A stretch of 64,000 nt of DNA from Utricularia gibba (taxonomy: Eukaryota > Plantae > Magnoliophyta): contig NEEC01000008.1 in assembly GCA_002189035.1 (NCBI GenBank), forward strand, positions 2,108,001-2,172,000, written 5' to 3'. Numbering within the stretch: the stretch's first letter is position 1; each line of letters begins with the position of its first letter. The notes beneath the pieces are model-generated. The model was not told where the DNA came from and did no database searches. It was given only the letters and a program-made list of their open reading frames with translations. Shown here in pieces: positions 38 through 59,066 of this stretch. Position numbers and translations under genes: made by a program.

Positions 38-2997
38 ATGGATTTCAAAGCATTGGTTGAGAATCAAAGTGGGAAAAGGATTAAGGCATTGAGATCTGAT
101 AATGGTGGTGAATACATACCGCATGAACTCCAAAAATACTGCCAAGAGCATGGAATTGAACAGCAATTTACTGCTCCTTATACCCCTCAGCAAAACGGTA
201 TCTGCGAAAGACGCAACAGAACAATCATGGACATGTCACGCTGCCTATTATTGGAAGGAAACCTACCAAAATTCTTCTGGGGAGAAGCTGTCCATACAGC
301 CGTTTACTTGCTCAACAGATTGCCTACACGAGGAACAAAAGAGTACAAAACGCCATATGAACTATGGAAGAACCGAGTTCCATCGGTTGATCACTTAAGG
401 GTATTCGGTTGTATATGTTTTACACAGACTCCACACCAACTCCGCACAAAGTTAGACAACAAAAGCAAGATGGGAATATTTGTTGGATATGCAACACAGT
501 CCAAAGCCTATAGAGTCTGGCTACCGGAATATAAGAAGATCATCATTAGTAGAGATATAGTCTTTAATGAAAGAAAAGCATGGAAGTGGAATCAAGAAAG
601 TTGGAACACCGAAACCTCAAACGTAACAGACTTGAGTTTCCTATTTCCATTACTACCAGCTGTCCCAACTGATATGATTACAACAAATGAGGATATGTCA
701 GTCAGAGAGGAAATAACAGAGCCATCACAAACATGCTCAGAAGAAATAGACATTGACTCACAAACCGATGCCTTTAGCCCCTCTCTTGAAGCTAATCAAA
801 ACTTACTACCAGAGGATAACCGTGAGCTCAATGACCTATCTGATTCAATACAAGCAGAGACTGACAACTCCCTGCTTCCTGAAAGTTTGCTTCAGAATCC
901 TACAGAAATAGAAATAGATCATCTATCCACCAACGCAACAAAACAAAGGTTGGAACAAAATCAGGAAAGGTGGATAGAAAATAGAGAACCTACTGAAAGA
1001 ATCCACGCAATACCTGATGAAAGTATGCACAAAGATCAATTTGTAGAAAAGGAAAGCATCTCTGAAAGACCTCTAGGAGAACAAGGATCACTGGAAACTC
1101 AAGAAATCACGCCCACAGACGCAAACCAGCCTAAAATAACTGAAAGCTTGGAGTCTATTATTATTAAAACTCGAAGTGGGAGAACCTCAAAATCACCCCT
1201 ATGGATGAAAGATTATGCCGAAATGTCAATTTGCAGTGCACCTGAAAGTATAGAGGCACCGCTTGAGCCAACTTCAATTGAAACGGCACTACAAGATCCA
1301 CAATGGAGAAAAGCAATGGAATTAGAACTCCAAACTATTGAGAAGTATAAGACATGGACCCTGGTAGAGAGAAAAGAAAACATGAGAGTAATTGGTACTA
1401 CGCACCAAGCTCAATCCAGATGGCAGCATCAACAAACTCAAGGCAAGATTGGTAGCTAAGGGCTTTAAACAGAGAGCTGGAATTGATTACCAAGACACAT
1501 TTGCGCCAGTAGCACGACTTGATACAATCAAGCTATTGTTGGCTTTAGCAGCATGCAAAAGATGGGATGTCTATCACCTTGATATCAAGTCTGCATTTCT
1601 AAATGGTCCACTAAATGAAGAAGTTTATATAGAACAACCATCAGGATTTGTGATTAAAGGGCAAGAAAACAAGGTCTATCTACTTCACAAAGCTTTATAC
1701 GGATTAAAACAAGCACCAAGAGCATGGTATTCTAAGATTGACCTCTACTTCACTCAGCATGGTTATGTGCGAAGTGAAAACGACAACACCCTATATATCC
1801 TGAATGTTCAAGCAGGACAAGTAATTATTTCCTTATACGTGGATGATATCCTCATGACAGGAAATAATCCAACTCTAGTGGGAAGCGAAAAACAAGCTCT
1901 AAAAAAACACTTTGAGCTAACAGATTTGGGACTAATGACCTATTTTCTAGGTCTTGAAATCATCCAGAGCTCTACATCTATTATTCTATCACAAAGGAAA
2001 TATATTCAGGATTTAATCAAGAAACATGAATATAGCTACTCTAGATTTTCTGCTGTACCTATCACACCGGATATGAAGAAGCAATTCTATCATACACAAG
2101 AAGAGTTCGTAGATGTTACAACTTACAGGGGAATAATTGGTTCTCTATTGTATCTCACTGCAACATGGCCAGACATAACTTATGCAGTGAATCTACTCTC
2201 TCAATTCATGGTGCAACCTCGAAAACCACATCTTGATGCTGCAAAACGAGTTTTGAAATATTTAAATCATACATCAAATCTGGGACTAATCTACACAAAA
2301 GGTACGAACCCTTATCTTCAAATATATTCAGACAGTGATTTTGCAGGAGATGGTCACGATCTCAAGTCAACCTCCGGATATGTATTCTCGCTGGGTGGAT
2401 CACCATTTGCCTGGAACAGCAAAAAAGCAAACTGTCATTGCTCAATCCTCTAGTGAGGCTGAGTACATGGCAGCAGCAGCTGCTGCAAACCATTTGATGT
2501 GGATACGCAAACTACTAACTGATCTGGGAATTCATATAGAGAAGCCTACCGTGATGAACATCGATAATAAATCTGCAATTTCTATGGGAAACAACCCCAG
2601 TCTCTTTGGAAGAACAAAACATATCCAGATAAAATTTCATGTACTGAGACACTATGTTCGTGAGAAGATGATTAAACTCAAGTTTATACAATCAGAGAGA
2701 CAGCTTGCAGATATACTCACCAAATTGATGTTTCCTCAGCAATTCTGCTATCTTCGTGACAAGCTCAACTTGAAGAAAATTGAAGAATCAGAAACCACTA
2801 TGGTACATGATATGCAACAATCAGTGAAACCGGAGTCAAGAAACTCTAAATTGCCTTCTCACAGGGGAATGTTGATGCAACCTGAGAAGGAAATTACAAG
2901 CAAACTGCTCCAATCAAACAAATCAGAAGAATCAACTGCAAACCACATTGATGAAGAAGAAAATCCAAGAGGAAATCTACAGATATGCAACGGCTAG
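38..2997 (+). pseudogene. copia pol (integrase 38-1399, RT ~1395-2426, RNase H to 2997), broken by two frameshifts
   Basis: Three overlapping ORFs in different frames. Frame switches at GGTACT (1394-1399) and at an A6 run (2421-2426, WNSKK|QTVIAQSS). Confidence 0.93.
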
Positions 2998-3192
2998 AAA
3001 CGGAATTAATGCAAAGGCCATCCATACACGTCTCTAACGGTCCAAAAAAAAAAAAAAGCATATGAATTTCCCTATAAGTAACAAGCTCTTCGCTGTAACT
3101 TGCTGTAACTCAATTCTTCAAAATTGAAGAAAAGAAAAACTCACTTTCATACATGTTTACACTCTCTTCATACATATTGTATTTTTACATCA
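2870..3192 (+). repeat. Putative 3' LTR of the copia element, preceded by PPT acaggggaa (2861-2869)
   Basis: Starts TGTTGATGCAA right after the purine tract. Has a TATA-like CCTATAAGTA near 3071 and a candidate ...TACATCA end at 3192. The 5' LTR is not available for confirmation. Confidence 0.65.
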
Positions 3193-4122
3193 AAGTTGCA
3201 TCTACCCAGCAAGCAACGTGAATACACAGTCAAGAAATTGAAGAATTGTTCTATGTTCTTTAGGGATGTCGACGGAGTACCCGAGGGGCGCCAATTTCGC
3301 GGATCAATTGAAGATCCACCTCTCCGTTTTTGGGATCCAGACTGCGTGTTTGTGTCCGTCCTCTCCAAATGGGCCGCTCTCCATATTCTGGGCTTCCAAT
3401 TCGTTTCCGATTTGGGCGGCCGTACACTGATCCATATTCTCCTTTCGCGCCTGACGTGGCGCTCGGCTATTGGGAACCCGTATACTTACGCCAGCAAAAG
3501 GCGAAATAAAATACCAATATTCGCCGCGCACTATCCCAATTTCTATTATAAAAACAATAAAAAAGTTCCTTTATTAATTTATCATTTGAAAAAATATTAT
3601 TGGTAAAAGCGGATAAGCGCGATTCCTTTTTGTCTTTTTAGCCGACGTGAAGTTGAATTTTATCACGTGGATTAGTGTGTTACATCCATCCTTTATCAGA
3701 CACGTGTAGTAAAACGGTACAAATATTAGGCACGTGTCATGAAGACGATTCCCTGGCTACTGCCTACTGGCTACGGTGTCCCTGGAATACCCTTAATTCA
3801 AATAAAATTATCCACTCCGAAAATAATCATAATAATAATAAATATTTGTTTTATTTTGTTGTTGATTTAGGTTTTTGAGAGTGGAAAAGGGCATCCCTTT
3901 TGACATGTCATTGTTGGCATGCGAGTGAAGTGCACGTCTCTCTTAGTTGACATCATACATTCACAAATCATAAACTATGAAGTCTGGTCTGATTTGATGG
4001 ATTTTTATATTAAATAACATATATTATTTTATTATTTATGTTACAATTTATTTAATTATAAATTCAAATTCTGCCTAACCAAGAAAAAAACAAAAGACAG
4101 AACAAAGAAAATATGTACCACG

Positions 4123-5253
4123 TCATACGAAATGGAAAAAAGGGGCACGACAAGTATTTCCAAATTCTTGACCGCGGACAAATTCAGAAGAGGATCTACG
4201 AATCTGATGCCGGAGGGGCTCGCCGGGGACGCCTTCCTGAGGGCTGCTTTGTGGCCTCAGGTTCATTGGCTGCGCACCGGAAAACGATGCCCTGTACGGA
4301 GGAGATAGATAAGGGTACCCTGCTGCAGGGAAAGCAGCCCAGGAGGAGGTCGGTGGCTGCCCAACAAAGGGTGACATCGGCGGGGCTGGTTGGAAGTCGC
4401 CACTCGTCGCTCTGGAGGTGGGGTTGATGACATCGACACTCTGCCTTGGCATTGGTTGGTCTCCGGCGGTAGCACTATCTTGGAAATTGAGTTTTGCGCG
4501 GTTTCCTCTGAATCGCAGAGCCGCCGCGTCGTAGGCTCTGGCGGCAGCCTCCGCCGTGTCGAAGGTGCCAAGCCACACTCTGGAAGCTTTATTAGGATCC
4601 CTGATTTCAGCTGCCCATTTTCCCCACGGCCTCTGGCGAACTCCCCTGTATTTCCTCTGTGGTATTTGACCAGCAACAGTCGTTGTTTCAGTGCAAGAAA
4701 CCTCCACCGGTGGCTCTGAAAAGTACTGGTTTTAATCAGTCAATAAAGAAACGCAAGTGCAAGCAAACAAGCGAGGGAATTATCCATCATACAATCTTTT
4801 ATAACTGGATCGGGCGGAGAAGTATAAACTTTCAGACACCCCCCTGCTGCTAAGTCACATGGGAATGATTCGAACACACTAACCAACTTTAAGGGAAGAA
4901 GACTGTCCATGCCCAGAACTCTGATCGCGGGTTCGCTTTTGTCCAGAAGAAGACGGCGAAGAGGCGGCGCCGGGGGTGGAAGGCAACGAAGAAGAAGAAG
5001 AAGGCACGGACTGTACGATAGCAGAAAGAAGGTAATCTGATTGTTGCTGCTGATTCAGGTACTGAAAATCCAAAGCCGCACCGGTCGCCGTGTCCTCCTC
5101 CCCCGCCGCGTTGTCTGCAACTCCTCCATAGCCGCGGCCTCCTCGTGCGTTCGCCACCTCAGCAACAAATAATATGTCGATGCTGCAGCCACGGCACTCC
5201 ACTCCTCTCGGCAGTAGAAGTGGAAGAGGGTGGCACCACCCCGGCAGCACCAT
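4123..5253 (-). CDS. AP2/ERF transcription factor, group X (ABR1/ERF110-like), 2 exons (5253-4884, 4715-4123)
   Basis: AP2 domain [34 protein letters not shown]. Exon 1 has SAIV and SSSGQKR motifs typical of ABR1-like proteins. The GT-AG intron 4883-4716 joins the exons in frame. Start codon uncertain. Confidence 0.9.
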
Positions 5254-49849: not shown

Positions 49850-49961
49850 GTTAATGTTCAGGTCAGAAACTGCATATCTTTCCACTTTTTACACCGAGTC
49901 CCATATTAAAGAAAGATGGCACGACCGTAGCTGCACCTGAACCACGCACCCCTGGACATTT

Positions 49962-51183
49962 TTACATTGGTTTCCAAGCTGACAGCAGTTCCTGGAACAA
50001 TTCTACCACAAGCTCGCGATCTGCCTGCTTGAAGAAATTACTCATTTCTTCTCTAACATCATAAATTTTTCCGAAATCAAGGAGGTACGTCAAGCACCCC
50101 TTTTTAATTTATCTAGTTGATAGAGCCAGGCCTCTTGCAGCCTTTCGAGCACATTCCCTGAGTTTATGTCCTCTAACAGGCTTTCTTCACATGCATCCTT
50201 GAGATCAACAATATCATACTTGTTGGCTGCAGCCAACAATGACAACCTGTGCTTCCAAAAATCCCCAGGTTTTATCGTCCCGTATAAGTACCTCAGGAGA
50301 GCCATGCAAGATTCCACTGTCATGTCATCAATGTCAATCGTGGAAGACTCTTTCTCCCTCAAGTCATGTTGGAACATGCTGCAGAAAACAGGAGAACTTG
50401 CAGAGAGAATAGCCTTGTGAGCCCTTAGTGTTCCATTAGCAGTATTGATATCAACATCCGCAAGAATCAACTCCTCCAGCATGTGGGAGAGGCATCTCAG
50501 AGAGCTTTGAGTTGCAAGATGCTGCGTTGAGCCGTCAATGGGCCATATCGAGCTCGGTTCCCCGCCCTGGAATGAAACATGAAGCCACTGAAACGTCTCT
50601 TGATGGATGGATATGAATCAACCTTAAAAAGTTACAGGAGCCTCACATTCACAGGACAGATTTTGAGATCCAAGAACTCAACGTCGATTATAAACCTGGA
50701 TGACGTGTTGATATCAACCGAGCAGGCAAAGTCATCACTTGTCCGGAGCAGCCTTTCGTGAACTGCACTTTCCAGAAAGCGAGCTGCAGTGAACAGAACG
50801 CAAAGAGCCTGAAAAGCGGAGAATTCGTAGATTCAATCACCTGGTGAAACGTAGGGTCTGCGGTTGGATCCGGAGGTTGTGACCCGAAAAATGAAGCGCG
50901 CGATTGGCGGCTGCTCCTTGGAGACCCGCGATGACTCCGGAAAAAGCCTGATGAACGTGGAGCGGTTCCTCTCCACCGTCAAATGCCTGCGAAAGTGGGA
51001 GAAGGAAACAAGAGTCGAGAATCAGGAACAATTTTAGGAACTTCCCGAACATCCAGAAATTTCCGACCAGTTCCAAATGCCCATTTTGAAGGGATCCGAT
51101 CTTTTGTAGGATGCAGTTACTCCGAAGCTGTCGATTTTCCATTGCGCCAGTCTTGCTATGGTTTCCACCTTCAAGTCCGCCAT
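49962..51183 (-). CDS. BTB/POZ protein (At1g21780-like); 1-nt frameshift at 50101-50105
   Basis: MADLKVETIARLAQWKI..KRSDPFKMGIWNW | KEQPPIARF | AHKAILSASSPVF..AANKYDI. Adding one A gives KLKKGCLTYLLDFGKIYDVR..AWKPM*. Confidence 0.92.
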
Positions 51184-52066
51184 GCCTTGTTGATCTAACC
51201 CTATGAAAGGAATCAGAAGCCACAGCCCTAGTCGTTGTTAGTGCTGGTAGTTGAATGTGGATGGAAAGAGGCGCTTTCTCGCAATAATGGTATTTTCGAG
51301 GGGTTTTGGAGAATACCATTGGGGGCTTCTTTAGTAAAGAATTGTTTCAGTGCGATGAGGATGACAGGGGAGGAGAACAAGGTTGTGTGGAACGAGGAGA
51401 AGCGCGAGACAAAAATATATATATATATATTTGGTTAACAGGTATTTAAAATAAAATTTACAATTATTATTTATATGACTATTTTCAATATTTTTTATTT
51501 TCTTAATTGTATGAAAATAAAAATTAGAAATAATAAAGTTTTGATATCATAAGAGGTAATTTTTATTAAACCTATGTAATATGTTAGTTATTATTTAAAA
51601 AATAAGATATGCTTATTTGATTTATCAAATCAAATGTATATATATTTTTATTAAATCCAAAGTAATCAAATGTTTTAAATGAATACTAAACCAGCCCAAG
51701 AGTTGAAAAATACCTGATTTAGGTGATTTTGCAGGAGGCAAAGGCGTTTGTTTCAAAGAACCCTTCTTGGAACTCCTGTTGTACAAGGAAGAAACTGGGT
51801 GTGATCTGTGAAGATCGTATTCGGGATTGCTTGAATATTTCTGTCTAAGCTTCCATTTTTCTGTTCTGTTACACGAACTCCTGTGTGGATCCTTTTGACA
51901 TCATCCATCCCATTCGACTTCCCAACATCACAACCGGTTCAAAATCAGCGGCTAATGCAACTGACACAACCACACCGATTCATGATTTCTCGGCAAGGTC
52001 GATAGATATCAACAACTGATTCATGTCCACCGGCACAAAGATCCCCATACAGCAAATTTAAGCTAT

Positions 52067-54411
52067 TTAAGCATCGGACCTTCTGGTGGAGTCATTCTGT
52101 GGCTGGTTCCGGTGAAATGGTGCCTCGGTGAACACGCCCATGGATCTCAGAGCATCCGAAATCCCCGCTAGATCGGTATTGATGGTTGCGTTCCCAAAAA
52201 CCCTGGTGGTGCCCATATCATTGCGAGCGCCACCTTCTCTTGCACTTGCCTCATTCCTGTTTTCGGATGCTTCTCCTTGGGGTGCATTGAACAGAGTATT
52301 GAGGTCAATAGAACAGCTTCCTCCTGTAACTGGAACATTTACGCATGGAGTTTGGAAGAGGACACGCCCACTTCTTTGCTGCTGCTCCTGGAGTTTCTGT
52401 TCAGCAACCTGTAATGAAATTGTAGCACACCATAAAATGCTTGCACAACTATAACCAGAATTTAAAGTTGCAAAGCTGCCATGTGGTACACCAGCCCTTC
52501 GCCTAGAGCAACATTGCCACTAACCCTTATATTCTCTTTCAGAGAATCGTTGCCAGGATCAAGTTGCAAAGCTGCCATGCAGAAGATAATTGTATTGGAG
52601 TCTGAAATGTTAACCAGTATGTGTGCTACACACTCAGATGTAAATACTAACCTTTCTTAAACCCCTTATCAATTGCATCCCTGTACTTTTCTTGAGCATA
52701 GTAAGCAAATCCCAAACGACTGTAAGCCTTGCTATAATTTGGATTGACTTGTATAGATTTCAGGCAATCTTGAACTGCTTTTGTGTAATCTTGAACCTGA
52801 GTATATGCTGCTGCCCTAACCGCACATGAGAATTGAGATAATTAGAAGGGAAAACTTCAGTCAACATATGCACAACACCACTGATTGCCTTTTACTCAGA
52901 AAACGCATTGTATTCGTAAGGATACATGACACAATTGTGAAGCAATTAAATACCATGAGGGATATGAATATGCTCCTAACCTGTTGCAATAATATACATC
53001 ATTCTTCTCAGAGAGGGCAATAGCAAAAGTATATAGGTCAATTGCTTCCGAATAAACTTTAGACTGCATGGCCTTGTTACCTACAATGAATAACTTTATC
53101 TACTAAGAGAAGACAAATTGATCCTTTACTGATGCTATGATTTTATTCATTCGGAATGCATGCATAAGAACGTTATTAAAGGCACATAAAAGGATCCCAA
53201 ACACCTGATAAGACAAAAAACAAGTGGCATAAAAATACATTCTGAAAATGAGCACCTTGTGCTTTGAAGGTCTCAGCAAGAGTATGCTTATTAGAAGTAT
53301 CGCATCTGGAGGTTTGCATTTCCTGAAACCATTGTGTTATATGATACAAGATAAAAACGAAACATTCTTCATGCAATCCATATCCACTTTATTGAAACAT
53401 TAAACTGCAGCAAAGAAAAAGTTAAGCATAATATGAAGTAATAAAAAACGCCTTAATACCTTGAAAGCCCTATGAAAAAATTTTGTTGCCAAATCAAGCT
53501 GGAGTTGATCATCACTGCCATCAGGAAGCCGTCTGAAATAGTTTATCTTTTCTAGAGCACTGAAAAATGTCCCAAATAGCTCATCGCTCACTGCAAGGTC
53601 AACAAAAAAAGAGTAGTGAGAAAAAGGCAACTGAATGCAAGGAGGGAGATGAGACAATTAGGCCTCTATAAATATGCTTATGAACTCCCAAAATTCTCCG
53701 CCTCACCAACTGCATCCGTCTCCTTCCCATTGCGCACATTCTGATGAAGAGAATTGTGAAGTTAGGATTCAATTACAAACAATCACTAGAAGCACAGGTG
53801 CATTGCCGATCATATGTGTTCATGGTGCAAGGCACATACAAATTAATGAAAACACAGTAAAATGCACAAAAGAAACATGTGATAATCACTCAGAAGAAGG
53901 TAGGTAGAACATTTGACTAAAAAAAAAGCATCAATAATCCAAGTATATCTAATAGTTCAAATAAGCATCGGAACATAATTGGTCAATCACAAGGATAGGT
54001 AGAAACCGATGCCTGAGAAGCAGCCAAAACTACCTCTCCCAGCGAACGAGATGGTTGACCAGTAAATGCCACATTCTCGGTAGCACTGTCCGTGATCCCA
54101 TCGAGAGAACGAAAAATCCTTACTAGAGAATCACTGCTAGTTGGATCATCAAGAGAAGACTTATCAATATTGAAGACTTCCGACAAACAGTCCTTGGCAA
54201 CATCAAGCGCTTCGGTATCAACTCCAGAATGCAGTTCAACTTCCAATAAAAAAAAATCACACAAAAAACAATCGAAGTTTAGAAAAATTGGTGCTGGAGG
54301 TATCTCCTAAGCATACGACGGAGTTGTAAAATAGTCACCTGTGTTGAGGAATTGGAGGAAAGAACGAACGATCCGTTGAGAGAGGGGAGAATCGACCTTC
54401 AGATTCGCCAT
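52067..54411 (-). CDS. SGTA: Small glutamine-rich TPR co-chaperone, SGTA/Sgt2 homologue (At4g08320/TPR8-like)
   Basis: N-terminal dimerisation domain DSPLSQRIVRSFLQFL|..EALDVAKDCLSEVF; three TPRs AETFKAQG|NKAMQ..YYCNR|AAAYTQ..YSKAYSRLG..|ALQLDPGNDSLKENIR|VAEQKL. Confidence 0.9.
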
Positions 54412-54673
54412 GGAAGTGAAGCTAGAGACAGTACGTCAAGAATGAATAGGGTCTACCTATTTGTAGAACCGAATGATAATAATAATAATAAAAGCGAAAA
54501 ACTGCTCCGAAAGGCAAAACATTAAGAAAACCTCGTCTTTTTTACAAACCGGAGTCATCTTTGCATCTCCATTGTGGAAGCTGCGTCAGCAAACATCCAC
54601 GGCGTTGTTGGCGATCTTCCACCGGGAAATATCGTGTTCTGTAAAGATCAAAAGGTACCAACGCAATTAAGAT

Positions 54674-56245
54674 ATGGTGGTTGAATCGTTTGGGGAAATC
54701 GGAAAATCGTTGGGAGCACCTGCAATTTTCGTCCTCGTATTGGTTTTCAATGTCGGCTACAAGTATATTGAATTATGCAAGAAGAAGGTTCGTGGACACT
54801 AGTATCGCTTGCGCTTTTAGATTTCGTGAGTTCATCAGAAGAAAGTTATGGCTGTAAAATTTGGCAATTCTGAGAGTTTCATAAGGTGCAATGCAGAAGC
54901 TGTCGATGAGTGATTCTGATATTCAACTGCAAGCAGATATTAAGCAGCTTCTGAGGGAGGCTAATTCTTTGTCACAGTGAGTCATGGAGTTTGAAATAAT
55001 CAGTTATCCGTTTTCAATGAAGTCAATTTGGAATTATAAATTATATTCCCAATGCGTTCCTAGGACTAAAATTTCTTGTCATGAAGGCCGCAATGGCTAA
55101 TTGATGTTTTTTTTACTGTGATTTGTTCCTCGACTTCAGACCTTCTACATTTGCAAAAGCTGCGAAATTGAGAAGGCAGGCAGCTGCAAAGGAGAGGGAA
55201 CTTGCAAAAAGTAAGATGCCTTTTCTTTCCATCGTTCCAGATTTTACTGTCATTTGAAACTTGTGTATATGATTTACCTTTAGGTATTCTCTGATGATCT
55301 TGTACTTCTTGGCTCTATTGTAATATGTATTTCTGATATTCATAAAATAAGTACCCATAAGTTCAGCATGATATTGCTTCAATGAAAAATTTGGCTTAAT
55401 TTTCTTTTGTTCTTGTAAGATTTTGTTAAAATGATTTGAGTTTGTTTGTTTTTTTTTCATTGGGCATTGATTTACATTCAATGGGGATGCATGAGTCACC
55501 TCTCACGAGTTCTTTTTATGTGCCATAAAGATCAAGAATTGCATGGGAAGGACGTCGAATCTTCATTTGGTAGATACCTGACACTTATACTGAGATCACA
55601 GGTCATTATCAATGAAATGTGTTGTCTGTGTATCATGTTGTGAAATTCAGTAAACGGTATCTGATTCTGTTTGCAGATCATTACCTATATCATGCTGATT
55701 GTCTGGTTTAGGCGCACGCCCGTGACCACAATATCAGATGAACTAGTAAAGCCTTTTGGTAATCTTTTATCCGGTGGCTGATTATATCACAATCAACAAT
55801 TTCAGTTTAGGGTGCTTTAAGACTTTTTTGTGTTCTTAAGTTACATATAATTCGAGAAAACCACTGCATGACTAAAATTTTTAGGGTAAAGAAAGAGCAA
55901 TAGCAAGCATGCCATTTGGTTTCGTTGTTTCAACTACATAGCTGTTTCTTGTTTCAGTGCTCTCCTTTTCTGTCATAATCTTCACCTTTACTTATAAATC
56001 TTTTTTCCATTAATCACCTAGATTCTTTGAAGGTCCTCCCTTTTTTACAGGTAGCTTGCTGTCCTTGAGAGCAGAATCATCTTATGTTGCTGTAATATGA
56101 ATGTGTTTCAAAGATCACTTCTTATTTTGCTCAAGGGCCTTTAAATTAATCTCAATGGCTCGTGATTATGCAGGTGGGGATTATACCCTGGTTGATTGTT
56201 TCCACCAGGGTTAGCATGTTCATTTGTGGGAAGTTATGGAGCTGA
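54674..56245 (+). CDS. GET1: GET1/WRB ER membrane insertase, 176 aa, 7 exons (54674-54787, 54897-54976, 55140-55210, 55531-55601, 55677-55758, 56051-56091, 56174-56245); absent from the ORF track
   Basis: TM1 APAIFVLVLVF; coiled coil ADIKQLLREANSLSQ|PSTFAKAAKLRRQAAAKERELAK; TM2 YIMLIVWFRRTP..LVKPFG; TM3 VGIIPWLIVSTRVS. All six GT-AG junctions are phase-compatible (531 nt). Confidence 0.92.
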
Positions 56246-56998
56246 TTCAAGTCCAGGGTAGGAGTTCTTTAGTTACTTGTATTTGTATTTTTGTCTTTTG
56301 GTAATTTGCTTGCTTTTCTGTTTATTCTCAACTTCTCCAGGGTGTTGGATTAGCTTCCTCCTACTTGAATCCCATCGACCTACGGCGTGATTTGTCGAAT
56401 GCTGGATTCGGATATGGAATATCAACAGCCGGTTCGCAGGTCCCTTAAATTTCAACATTGCACTAAAACTACACATGATCATCATTTTTGTAGTCAGTGT
56501 AGACCAGTTCATAGGAAATTTTTTAGAAACAGAAATTGAGGTTTCCCTCTTCCCATACTCTCTTTTCACATCTATCCTTACTACTATCTGTTTTTCGATT
56601 GTAGTTCACCATTAATTTGTATCAAATGAAGATTACATTTTGATAATGGAAGGAGTTTTTGCTTAGAAAAAATGTTGGCAGTTGCTTCTGTGGAGATTAC
56701 TGGGGAAACTATTCTTCCCAAGGTTTACTGTGTTATTTGTGCAACCTTTTTCTCCCTCATGACATACGTATTAGATTCAACTCAATACACAGAGAAACTG
56801 ATCCAACTGAAACAGCATACAGCTACCTATGTCGCCTTTCCAGGCATCAAGCCATCACTAAAAGAACAGCGTGACGGGACAGGGTACAACAGCAGAGTAG
56901 AGAGCTTAACAATGAACTACGCCATCCAGCTTTGGGGCGAAATAACCAAGAACAATCTGTTACACTGCCAGTCGCCAGATCATTGATGCAGGTGAGCT

Positions 56999-59066
56999 TC
57001 AGATTTGATAATCTGGATTAAAGGCCAGAGCCTCTCTGTAAATCAGCTCCTTCATCTGTTCTTCTGTAAGACCATGCTTTTCGAAGTCGAAATTAAACGG
57101 ATTCGGGCAAATCGGCTCGTCACTTATGTCATGGAGCGAGTTGAGGTATGGATGGGCCAAAGCATCTTCCACTGATACACAGATGTTATAGAATGTCAGG
57201 TGCAAGGCCAGGTTCCTATATTATTACTTGCAACTTTCTCATCTACATAATGCAACTACATGCTTCCGACGAAATCATTACTCATGGCTAAGTTTACTAG
57301 TAAAAAAGCATCACTTGAAAGTTACTGGAGTATAGGCAATAGAAGTTCTTACCAGTAATTCTTCGTCTGGGATCAAAGGTCAGCATCTTCTCGACCAGAT
57401 CAATAGCAAGAGGATGCACTTGTGGAAACTTCTCTGCGAAAGACTGCGGGTGATGAGGTGGAAGTTGCTTGATATATCTTATGGCATTTTCATTCAAGAA
57501 TCCCAACTCAGACTCAGATGGTGTGCCAATTAACTGCAAAGAGATGAGTGAAGGATGAGCGTGTAAACATTCTGTGCTGATAAAAAAAATCCTGGAATGG
57601 AGACTGTGAAGAACCTCCATCAGAAGACGCAACTGATGCACATGGTCCCTCCCTGGAAATAATGGCTTTCGGTCCATCAGTTCCATAAAAATGCACCCAA
57701 CTGACCAAATATCAATGGCAGCGGTATAATCAGAAGAGTTTAATAACAGCTCTGGTGCCCTGTACCACCTTGTAACAACATATTCAGTCATAAAGTCTGT
57801 TTCAGATGTGACCCGAGCCAATCCAAAATCACAAATCTTGAGATCACAATTGGCATTCAGAAGAAGATTACTAGGCTTCAAATCCCTATGCAGAACATTA
57901 GCCGAGTGGATGTATTTAAGTCCACGGAGAATCTGATACAAGAAATACTGCAAAAGAAGTATCCACGCTTAGAACACCTCCAATCAAACATATTACGAGA
58001 GAAATATATGCTAATGACTAAAAATCAGCAACACAGATGTTTTGATGTTTAAAAGGAGAAACAAGCAAACAAAAGCTTTTTGGAATGACCCAAAAGCACA
58101 AATGCCAATTCAATGAGCCGAGAAAAAACAGCAAAGCACGAGCAGAATGTAGTAGGACCTGGCAATGCTCCTCTGACAATGGCTGATTAGATCTGATAAT
58201 TTGGTGGAGATCAGTGTCCATGAGCTCATATGCAATATATACATCATTGAATGAATCCCTTCGAGGAGGAACAACAATATCTCTGATTGCCACAACCTGA
58301 AGATAATGACTAAAACCAGCTACAACAGTTTCCATATAAATTCAGACAGAATTTCCACAACCAATCCTACACCCCTTTCTCTTTTAAGCGTAAAATTAAA
58401 ACTGAAATTTCATTCATCAGTCAGGGAAGGAAAAAGGGGCGTCTCAGTTCTAAAAAGCACACCACAGCTCTTTTTTTTTCCTTACTACAGAAACTCTATA
58501 GATGCAACCGATTAACGATCTACGCTACAGAAGCTACATACTTGGTTATATATATGTTGAAATCAGAAACTTTACTGTAAAACAGGTGAAAAAAAAAACG
58601 TGAAGTGCTGCTGGAGATAGTGAAACGAACATTTTCATGATCCATGTGCCGAAGAAGCTTGATCTCTCGGAGAGTCCTCTTTGCGTCAATTTTATTATCA
58701 AACGCATTTGTAATCTTCTTCAAAGCCACGTGCTCGTTGGTCTCCGAGTTCAGAGCAGAACTGTTGGACAACAAAGGAAATGAAATACAGGACAAGGGGA
58801 TGCAGCGAAGAAAAATCAGTAAAAAGAACGTCTCGATACCAGACGATGCCATATGCTCCTTTCCCGATTGGCATAATTGGGGGTTTATATTTAGAAGTGA
58901 CCTCGAATATGTTGCCGAAGATATTGTACTGAATAAACCGGCCGTCGTGACTAAGCGTCGCTGACACTTGATCCATCGGAGGCTGGTGCTGCTGCGGAGG
59001 CGGCGGCGGCGGCGGAGGCTCCACTTCCGACATCGCGGTGTCAGGAGGATGAGCTCCACCTTCCAT
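56999..59066 (-). CDS. MPK6: Mitogen-activated protein kinase, group A TEY type, 6 exons
   Basis: [74 protein letters not shown]. Confidence 0.96.

What the first reader, a model, noticed from the sequence alone, without database searches (positions are those of the whole stretch)
52067..56245. Head-to-head SGTA-GET1 pair: both ends of the GET tail-anchored protein pathway share a 262-bp promoter
Seen in sequence: SGTA (ATG 54411, minus) and GET1 (ATG 54674, plus; 7 small exons missed by the ORF track) diverge from only 262 nt, which must hold both 5' UTRs and core promoters (bZIP-like cores TACGTCA near 54431 and TGCGTCA near 54582). Established: Sgt2/SGTA captures nascent tail-anchored proteins and hands them via Get4/5 to Get3, and Get1/WRB with Get2/CAML inserts them into the ER. 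The recalled Arabidopsis homologs (At4g08320, At4g16444) are not adjacent, and the plant SGTA role is poorly established. Inference: a bidirectional promoter co-regulates pathway entry and exit, an operon-like pairing that would also support this TPR protein as the functional plant Sgt2.
Basis: partly seen in the sequence, partly recalled or inferred. Interest (0 to 1): 0.8.

Follow-up and report, generated by a model that had tools for sequence, protein, structure and literature searches.

The report
Lineage-specific head-to-head SGT2–GET1 gene pair
Two genes of the plant tail-anchored-protein (GET) pathway really do sit head to head 262 bases apart here, but the pairing is absent from every other plant checked, so it looks like a by-product of rearrangement in a very compact genome, not a selected co-regulation unit.

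Summary
A 9-exon SGT2/SGTA-type co-chaperone gene lies on the minus strand (ATG 54411). A 7-coding-exon GET1/WRB gene lies on the plus strand (ATG 54674). Their start codons are 262 nt apart, both are transcribed, and independent DNA runs carry the junction.

Both identities are now tool-supported:
- SGT has an SGTA_dimer hit and TPR hits, and aligns full length to plant SGT2/TPR8 orthologues.
- GET1 is 50% identical to Arabidopsis GET1 (E 1.8e-46), with matching exon lengths and intron phases.

The functional reading is not supported.
- No GET1 lies beside SGT in Genlisea, Sesamum, Erythranthe, tomato or Arabidopsis suecica.
- No SGT lies beside GET1 in Arabidopsis thaliana or in three plant contigs from metagenomes.
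- A BTB gene 3' of SGT is shared with Erythranthe, so the breakpoint lies on SGT's 5' side.
- The window carries about one gene per 2.5–4 kb, so short divergent spacers are expected.
- The two proposed bZIP-like cores lie in transcribed sequence, and the related 7-mer pattern tested occurs at chance frequency.

RNA contigs refine the picture. The proximal transcript ends are only about 100 nt apart. One SGT isoform starts inside the GET1 5' region and splices out a 110-nt 5'UTR intron. The scan had not noted this pair before.

The parts
52067..54411 (-). SGT2/SGTA-type co-chaperone gene, CDS span. Exons: 54411-54339, 54239-54034, 53740-53707, 53590-53460, 53322-53256, 53080-52981, 52815-52652, 52571-52525, 52408-52067. 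Product 387 aa.
   Evidence: Splice model. All eight introns seen as joints in four RNA runs. SGTA_dimer 28 bits (cut-off 26.8) and TPR_1 46.7 bits. Full-length alignment to plant SGT2/TPR8 orthologues.
51732..52066 (-). SGT 3'UTR (at least this far)
   Evidence: RNA contigs run from 52405 down to 51732, 51700 and 51751 in X1, X2 and X3.
54422..54531 (-). SGT 5'UTR intron (GT..AG on the minus strand), used by a distal-start isoform
   Evidence: Joint 54421/54532 with CT..AC ends in run X1. Donor GTTTTC and acceptor ...CTCTAG.
54532..54769 (-). Stretch joined to SGT exon 1 in the X1 contig. It holds the distal SGT 5' exon (true 5' end unknown) and overlaps the GET1 5'UTR and exon 1 antisense.
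   Evidence: X1 record 1, pieces 54532-54769 plus the SGT exons. Contigs are strandless, so only an overlap of at least one assembler word length with GET1 RNA is shown.
54412..54673 (.). 262-nt ATG-to-ATG spacer. The untranscribed core between the proximal transcript ends is about 54433-54536.
   Evidence: for length. for contig ends at 54421/54424/54432 and 54537. No homology to SGT upstream regions of Genlisea, Sesamum or Erythranthe.
54537..54673 (+). GET1 5'UTR (approximate start), free of upstream ATG
   Evidence: Contigs in X2 and X3 begin at 54537. No ATG in 54532-54673 on the plus strand.
54674..56245 (+). GET1/WRB gene, CDS span. Exons: 54674-54787, 54897-54976, 55140-55210, 55531-55601, 55677-55758, 56051-56091, 56174-56245. 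Product 176 aa.
   Evidence: Model and three hydrophobic segments. Introns 2-6 as RNA joints. 50% identity over 138 aa to A. thaliana GET1, E 1.8e-46. AtGET1 hits Pfam CHD5 (PF04420) at 34.3 bits. Same intron positions as the AtGET1 gene.
56257..56339 (+). GET1 3'UTR intron, followed by a non-coding last exon reaching at least about 56619
   Evidence: Joint 56256/56340, GT..AG, in three runs, and contigs covering 56340-56619.
49960..51319 (-). BTB/POZ gene 3' of SGT; retained ancestral neighbour
   Evidence: Pfam BTB 79 bits. 75-83% aa identity to the BTB gene 9 kb 3' of SGT in Erythranthe guttata, L004 22549-23462.
56999..59066 (-). MAP-kinase-like gene, convergent with GET1
   Evidence: ORFs. 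Pkinase 150 bits.

Best explanation
This is a genuine divergent gene pair in a very gene-dense Lamiales nuclear genome. The genome is probably a miniature one from the Lentibulariaceae; that part is inference. One gene is an orthologue of the plant SGT2/SGTA candidate (Arabidopsis TPR8, At4g08320). The other is the orthologue of Arabidopsis GET1 (At4g16444).

The pairing arose in this lineage by rearrangement or deletion on the 5' side of SGT. The 3' side still keeps an ancestral BTB neighbour. The ancestral upstream neighbour seen in Sesamum and Erythranthe (PDS5) has been replaced by GET1.

Both genes are transcribed outward from a core of roughly 100 nt. An alternative SGT start lies inside the GET1 5' region, and that isoform removes most of the spacer as a 5'UTR intron. 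Sharing of promoter or nucleosome-free DNA is therefore physically unavoidable (inferred). Nothing shows that selection created or maintains the pairing. It is most simply a chance juxtaposition of the kind that compaction and fractionation produce.
For: Gene models and RNA support.

SGT identity. The best matches are Lamiales (Sesamum 55% over the full length; Genlisea aurea 69% over 295 aa).

GET1 identity.

Non-conservation of the pairing:
- Genlisea aurea L001: 1.97 kb upstream, no GET1.
- Sesamum alatum L002 and Erythranthe guttata L004: PDS5 lies upstream.
- Tomato L005: ChaC lies upstream.
- Arabidopsis suecica L006: CHZ lies upstream.
- A. thaliana GET1 locus L022: no TPR gene within 10 kb.
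- Plant GET1 contigs L009, L010 and L019: 4-8 kb of upstream sequence, no SGT.

BTB microsynteny with Erythranthe.

Gene density of about one gene per 2.5-4 kb in the window.

Junction present in independent DNA runs.

The Utricularia gibba genome paper reports many very short promoters, a 400-bp bidirectional promoter and extreme fractionation after three genome duplications (PMC4972453). This is relevant only if the organism is that species or a close relative.

Chance estimate (inference): with N genes in random order and pathways of about 7 genes, roughly k-1, or about 6, same-pathway neighbour pairs are expected per genome.
Against: - The two genes act in the same pathway. For this particular pathway alone, a random adjacency is rare: about 21 pairs x 2/28,500, or roughly 1.5e-3 per genome.
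- Both are expressed in all four RNA sets examined, and their depth ranks are concordant, though unnormalised.
- No other Utricularia or Pinguicula genome could be examined, so conservation within the immediate clade is unknown.
- The identity of the organism is inferred, not shown.
Confidence: 0.8

Rival explanations
1. The pairing is a selected, operon-like unit. A shared bidirectional promoter co-regulates entry (SGT2) and exit (GET1) of the GET pathway, and the linkage is evidence that this TPR protein is the functional plant Sgt2.
For: - Same pathway, with a 262-nt spacer.
- Both genes are transcribed in the same four RNA sets, with the same rank order of depth.
- The plant SGT2 is still unassigned experimentally, so any linkage would be informative.
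Against: - The adjacency is absent in five other SGT loci and four other GET1 loci, including three Lamiales.
- There is no conserved non-coding sequence upstream of SGT.
- The proposed bZIP-like cores lie in transcribed sequence, and the related 7-mer pattern tested is at chance frequency.
- The SGT C-domain is depleted of methionine relative to 99 orthologues.
- The depth data are unnormalised and come from only four runs.
Confidence: 0.1
2. The arrangement matters, but antagonistically. An SGT isoform that starts inside the GET1 5' region gives overlapping divergent transcription. It interferes with GET1 initiation or processing, so the two genes are anti-coupled and not co-regulated.
For: - In X1, a minus-strand GT..AG intron (54422-54531) joins SGT exon 1 to sequence at 54532 and beyond, which is also GET1 5'UTR and exon 1.
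- That distal exon carries upstream ATGs.
- GET1 'intron 1' is covered contiguously by contigs at exon-like depth: X1 record 2 at 32.5 against 34.1 for the exons, and X4 record 15 starts inside it. Much GET1 RNA may therefore be unproductive.
- The GET1/SGT depth ratio differs two- to three-fold between X1 and X2-X4.
Against: - The distal junction appears in only one of four runs.
- Contigs are strandless and can merge two genes' RNAs.
- No strand-specific or start-site data are available.
- Intron retention is common in plants without any regulatory meaning.
Confidence: 0.07
3. Artefact: the adjacency is a mis-assembly, or one of the two genes is a decaying pseudogene copy.
For: - The SGT C-terminal domain is atypical.
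- The window organism's proteins are absent from the protein collection, so no independent annotation was seen.
Against: - DNA runs from three samples in two studies hold 69-99% of the junction words.
- An RNA contig bridges SGT and the GET1 5' region.
- Both reading frames are intact with canonical splice sites, and both are expressed.
Confidence: 0.03

Closest known systems
Arabidopsis thaliana GET1 (At4g16444; NP_567498; WRB/Get1 family, Pfam CHD5 PF04420)
   Same: - 50% identity over 138 aa (E 1.8e-46), with alignment along the whole length.
- Three hydrophobic segments, with the coiled-coil stretch ...LSQP(S/A)TFA(K/Q)AAKLRR... between the first and second, and the GIIPWLI motif in the third.
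- Seven coding exons with the same intron positions and phases; four exon lengths are identical at 80, 71, 71 and 82 nt.
   Different: - 176 aa against 178 aa.
- The loop before the third hydrophobic segment is shorter.
- The genomic neighbours are entirely different.
- RNA contigs suggest frequent retention of intron 1.
Plant SGT2/SGTA candidates (Arabidopsis TPR8, At4g08320, and orthologues; yeast Sgt2, human SGTA)
   Same: - N-terminal SGTA_dimer domain, plant-specific middle region, three-repeat TPR module, and a C-terminal tail that aligns with orthologues.
- Exon structure collinear with Genlisea and Sesamum.
   Different: - The C-terminal domain after the TPR module is 108 aa with 2 Met, against a median of 137 aa and 8 Met in 99 orthologues. 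The conserved SMxMNMAGN and RSMMGMF motifs are degraded.
- The upstream neighbour is GET1, not PDS5 (Lamiales), ChaC (tomato) or CHZ (Arabidopsis).
Short plant bidirectional promoters, e.g. the 400-bp divergent pair shown active in Utricularia gibba (PMC4972453) and At4g35985/At4g35987 (PMC3834115)
   Same: Head-to-head genes on opposite strands, 5' ends well under 1 kb apart, both transcribed.
   Different: - The spacer is even shorter, about 100 nt between the proximal transcript ends.
- One partner has an alternative start beyond the other's start.
- No reporter or co-expression evidence exists for this pair.

Membership tests
Sgt2/SGTA co-chaperone | N-terminal homodimerisation / Get5-UBL-binding domain (Pfam SGTA_dimer, PF16546) | tested here: met
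   Exon 2 alone scores 28 bits against a cut-off of 26.8. The N-terminus aligns with orthologues.
Sgt2/SGTA co-chaperone | Central three-repeat TPR module | tested here: met
   TPR_1 46.7 bits and TPR_2 34.2 bits on exon 7, with weaker hits on exon 6. 80-88% identity to Lamiales orthologues across the module.
Sgt2/SGTA co-chaperone | C-terminal Gln/Met-rich client-binding domain | tested here: inconclusive
   The tail aligns with orthologues but has 2 Met against a median of 8 (range 2-12, n=99), and its conserved Met-rich motifs are degraded.
Sgt2/SGTA co-chaperone | Binds GET4/GET5-type partners, Hsp70 and tail-anchored clients | not testable with these tools
   Needs interaction assays.
Get1/WRB (Pfam CHD5, PF04420) | Sequence membership in the family | tested here: met
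   50% identity, E 1.8e-46, to A. thaliana GET1. That protein hits PF04420 at 34.3 bits against a cut-off of 29.3 and is named GET1 by its sources. The spliced window protein itself could not be scanned whole because it has no reference. Its single exons gave no hit.
Get1/WRB (Pfam CHD5, PF04420) | Three transmembrane segments with a cytosolic coiled coil between the first and second | tested here: met
   Hydropathy peaks at about residues 9-30, 104-123 and 151-172. The charged helical stretch between the first two aligns with AtGET1.
Get1/WRB (Pfam CHD5, PF04420) | Binds GET3 and acts with GET2 as the ER insertase | not testable with these tools
   Needs biochemistry or genetics.
Bidirectional (divergent) promoter pair | Opposite strands, 5' ends under 1 kb apart, both transcribed | tested here: met
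   262 nt between the ATGs. RNA contigs cover both genes in four runs.
Bidirectional (divergent) promoter pair | Correlated expression of the partners | tested here: inconclusive
   Only four unnormalised contig depths are available. SGT: 52.7, 19.1, 26.7, 22.4. GET1: about 34, 4-6.5, 9.9, 6.5.
Conserved functional gene cluster (operon-like pairing) | Linkage maintained across related genomes | tested here: not met
   Absent in Genlisea, Sesamum, Erythranthe, tomato, both Arabidopsis loci and three metagenome-derived plant GET1 contigs.

The most novel reading that the evidence does not exclude
In this miniature-genome lineage, the accidental juxtaposition has been co-opted. Overlapping divergent transcription would couple, positively or negatively, the supply of the GET pathway's entry chaperone and its ER receptor. 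The components would be an SGT start inside the GET1 5' region, a spacer that doubles as an SGT 5'UTR intron, and frequent retention of GET1 intron 1. This would occur in a species whose SGT has an eroded client-binding tail.
Probability: 0.08. Interest if true: 0.45.

Novelty: new member of a known kind. Interest (0 to 1): 0.17.

Why it matters
If the pairing were selected, it would be rare genomic evidence for which TPR protein is the plant Sgt2, a question still open in 2025. The evidence here says it is not selected. The linkage is confined to this lineage and sits at a rearrangement breakpoint in a genome where spacers of a few hundred bases are normal.

The practical value is modest:
- clean, RNA-backed models for both genes, including a GET1 gene that ORF-based tracks miss;
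- an example of how extreme compaction forces two unrelated transcription units to share, and even overlap, their 5' ends;
- a caution against reading function into single-genome adjacency.

Tried and rejected
1. The one whole-library HMMER job used the 54-aa TPR exon. It was swamped by long multi-TPR proteins. Only P0046, an Asteraceae SGT-like protein, was useful, as a seed.
2. The protein atlas with GET1 exon 1 (38 aa) gave nothing interpretable.
3. PDB sequence searches with GET1 exons 2 and 3 gave no hits even at E 10.
4. Pfam on single GET1 exons gave no CHD5 hit.
5. PAT1 was tried as a synteny anchor to reach GET1 in other Lamiales. In Paulownia, neither the MAP kinase nor GET1 lies beside PAT1, and the Erythranthe product was not on record.
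6. tblastx between the window and all fetched GET1 loci found no shared flanking genes.
7. blastn found no conserved non-coding sequence upstream of SGT.
8. Whole-protein Pfam scan, homologue search, structure prediction and fold search of the spliced window GET1 and SGT proteins were left out. Spliced sequences have no reference, and long sequences were not to be typed. GET1 identity was instead reached through a back-translated motif search. That search fetched an Arabidopsis GET1 cDNA contig.
9. The window organism's own proteins were not in the protein collection, so no look-up of its annotated locus was possible.
10. Assembly artefact was considered and rejected.
Full report
**What is there**

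Reading both strands of 51.8-56.5 kb and chaining exons by hand and by script gives two clean gene models with canonical GT-AG introns throughout.

On the minus strand, nine coding exons run from ATG 54411 to the stop codon at 52069-52067 and encode 387 aa. On the plus strand, seven coding exons run from ATG 54674 to the stop codon at 56243-56245 and encode 176 aa. That protein has three hydrophobic segments, at about residues 9-30, 104-123 and 151-172. The distance between the two start codons is exactly 262 nt (54412-54673).

**RNA and DNA support**

I laid Logan contigs of four RNA runs of the window's organism on 51700-56700.

- All eight SGT coding introns appear as joints in all four runs.
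- GET1 introns 2-6 appear as joints in two to four runs each.
- A further GT..AG joint at 56256/56340 shows a 3'UTR intron, so GET1 has an eighth, non-coding exon.

The exon 1-exon 2 joint of GET1 was not among the 15 joints listed; one joint was not shown. Two contigs (X1 54758-54976 and X4 54854-54976) instead run straight through 'intron 1' at exon-like depth. Retention of this intron, or an internal start, is therefore common. The intron itself is supported by conservation, described below.

DNA runs from three samples in two studies hold 69-99% of the sampled words of 54150-54950. The junction is therefore not an assembly artefact.

**Identity of the minus-strand gene**

Exon 2 alone passes Pfam's threshold for SGTA_dimer (28 bits; cut-off 26.8). 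Exon 7 gives TPR_1 at 46.7 bits.

Homologue searches were seeded through an SGT-like protein found. A local BLASTP then showed full-length similarity to the plant family that sources name 'small glutamine-rich TPR-containing protein'. This family includes the Arabidopsis At4g08320/TPR8 lineage. The best matches are Lamiales: Sesamum alatum at 55% over the full length and Genlisea aurea at 69% over the first 295 aa.

The review PMC8644595 lists At4g08320 as the sequence-based SGT2/SGTA candidate and At4g16444 as AtGET1, and says several putative Sgt2 orthologues exist. A 2025 paper still names only AtGET4 for the plant pre-targeting complex.

One oddity: the tail after the TPR module has 2 methionines, against a median of 8 (range 2-12) in 99 orthologues. 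The conserved Met-rich motifs are degraded.

**Identity of the plus-strand gene**

Single exons are too short for Pfam, the PDB or the atlas. The spliced protein has no reference, so I did not submit it whole.

Instead I scanned metagenome contigs with a back-translated pattern of the exon-3 peptide P-[SA]-T-F-A-[KQ]-A-A-K-L-R-R. This returned 15 plant contigs. In fourteen of them, hits to the window protein or to AtGET1 lie in the same order as the exons.

The fifteenth, L020, is a cDNA-like contig. Its 178-aa ORF is exactly Arabidopsis thaliana GET1 (NP_567498, GET1_ARATH), and it hits Pfam CHD5 (PF04420) at 34.3 bits against a cut-off of 29.3.

The window protein is 50% identical to it over 138 aa (E 1.8e-46) and aligns end to end. 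The alignment includes the LSQPxTFAxAAKLRR coiled-coil stretch and the GIIPWLI motif of the last hydrophobic segment.

Mapping the Arabidopsis CDS on its gene shows seven coding exons with the same intron positions and phases. Four exon lengths are identical (80, 71, 71 and 82 nt), and intron 1 falls right after the KKK codons. This is GET1.

**Is the pairing conserved?**

It was absent from every other plant locus I could check.

From the SGT side, with 10-kb flanks where the contig allowed:

| Species (locus) | Upstream of SGT |
|---|---|
| Genlisea aurea (L001) | 1.97 kb available, no gene called; AMP-binding gene downstream |
| Sesamum alatum (L002) | PDS5 |
| Erythranthe guttata (L004) | PDS5 |
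| Tomato (L005) | ChaC |
| Arabidopsis suecica (L006) | CHZ |

Sensitive tblastn with the window GET1 finds nothing in any of these loci.

From the GET1 side, the A. thaliana locus has complex I subunit, CASP-like, Fe-hydrogenase-like, bHLH and ADA2 neighbours, and no TPR gene. Metagenome-derived plant GET1 contigs with 4-8 kb of upstream sequence (L009, L010, L019) contain no SGT.

The only flanking gene shared with any other SGT locus is a BTB/POZ gene. Window 49960-50767 is 75-83% identical at protein level to the BTB gene 9 kb 3' of SGT in Erythranthe, although in the opposite relative orientation. SGT therefore still sits in a remnant of its ancestral neighbourhood. The change is on its 5' side, exactly where GET1 now abuts. 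No non-coding homology survives upstream of SGT, and GET1's other neighbours here (MAP kinase, PAT1) are not beside GET1 or PAT1 elsewhere.

**Genomic context**

The 20 kb around the pair hold eight genes: an acidic protein, MADS, PDI-like, BTB, SGT, GET1, MAP kinase and PAT1. The whole window has about one gene per 4 kb plus one copia-type element.

Four observations together point to a miniature Lentibulariaceae genome such as Utricularia gibba:
- the nearest SGT relative is Genlisea;
- divergence from other Lamiales is high;
- the DNA runs date from 2013;
- those runs assemble to only 51-95 Mb of contigs.

This is inference, not shown. For that species, the genome paper reports a high share of very short promoters, a 400-bp bidirectional promoter verified by transient expression, and extreme fractionation after three genome duplications (PMC4972453). 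In such a genome a 262-nt divergent spacer is unremarkable.

A rough calculation (inference) says that random gene order yields about k-1 same-pathway neighbour pairs per genome for pathways of k genes. A scan that reads whole genomes should therefore meet a few by chance. For the GET pathway alone, though, the expectation is only about 1.5e-3.

**How the spacer is used**

SGT contigs end at 54421, 54424 and 54432 in three runs. GET1-side contigs start at 54537 in two runs. The proximal transcript ends are therefore only about 100 nt apart, flanking an AT-rich centre.

In run X1, SGT exon 1 is spliced from 54421 to 54532 across a minus-strand GT..AG intron. The contig continues to 54769, inside GET1 exon 1. 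Contigs are strandless, so the exact 5' end is unknown. Still, an SGT isoform must start inside the GET1 5' region, and the two units then overlap. That distal exon carries upstream ATGs, whereas the GET1 5'UTR has none.

TACGTCA is at the SGT proximal start and the intron acceptor. TGCGTCA is in the GET1 5'UTR. The related pattern TKCGTCA, which includes TGCGTCA but not TACGTCA, occurs 11 times in the window against 12.75 expected.

Depths of the two genes rise and fall together across the four runs but are unnormalised. The GET1/SGT ratio varies two- to three-fold. Co-regulation is therefore untested.

**Verdict**

The gene identifications are right. The functional inference, a selected operon-like pairing that validates this protein as the plant Sgt2, is not supported: the linkage is lineage-specific and sits at a rearrangement breakpoint in a compacted genome.

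Physical sharing of promoter DNA is real and may have local consequences. One speculative possibility is interference from the overlapping SGT isoform. That is a low-probability reading which needs start-site and strand-specific data.

Noticed in passing
window 54788-54896: GET1 'intron 1' is covered contiguously by RNA contigs at exon-like depth (X1 54758-54976 at depth 32.5; the X4 contig starts at 54854). The exon 1-exon 2 joint was not among the listed joints. Retained, it stops the frame after 42 aa. An in-frame ATG at 54891 would then give a GET1 lacking its first transmembrane segment.
   Followed up: partly
window 54422-54769: An SGT isoform (run X1) uses a 110-nt 5'UTR intron and an upstream exon that overlaps the GET1 5'UTR and exon 1 on the opposite strand. 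That exon holds upstream ATGs at 54596, 54572, 54566 and 54558.
   Followed up: partly
window 52070-52393 (SGT last exon): The C-terminal, presumed client-binding tail of this SGT has 2 Met in 108 aa, against a median of 8 in 137 aa for 99 plant orthologues. The conserved Met-rich motifs are replaced.
   Followed up: partly
window 52465-52483 and 52561-52579: A 19-nt string covering the acceptor and start of SGT exon 8 (CATGGCAGCTTTGCAACTT on the minus strand) is repeated inside intron 8. This is a small duplication that creates a decoy acceptor. RNA contigs use only the upstream copy.
   Followed up: no
window 56257-56339 and 56340-56619: GET1 has a 3'UTR intron 11-12 nt after its stop codon. 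Its last exon ends within about 380 nt of the stop codon of the convergent MAP-kinase gene (56999).
   Followed up: no
window 49960-51319; L004 22549-23462: The BTB/POZ gene 3' of SGT is the only neighbour shared with another Lamiales SGT locus (Erythranthe), and it lies in the opposite relative orientation. This implies at least two local rearrangements.
   Followed up: partly
window 38-5250: Copia-type retroelement remnants (integrase, SH3-like and RVT_2 domains in consecutive ORFs) at the left end of an otherwise gene-dense window. Observed only.
   Followed up: no
P0046, P0151 and other Rutidosis leptorrhynchoides entries: An Asteraceae species carries many SGT-like paralogues, including models with a tandemly duplicated middle-plus-TPR module (483 and 514 aa). 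This is a lineage-specific expansion of the family.
   Followed up: no
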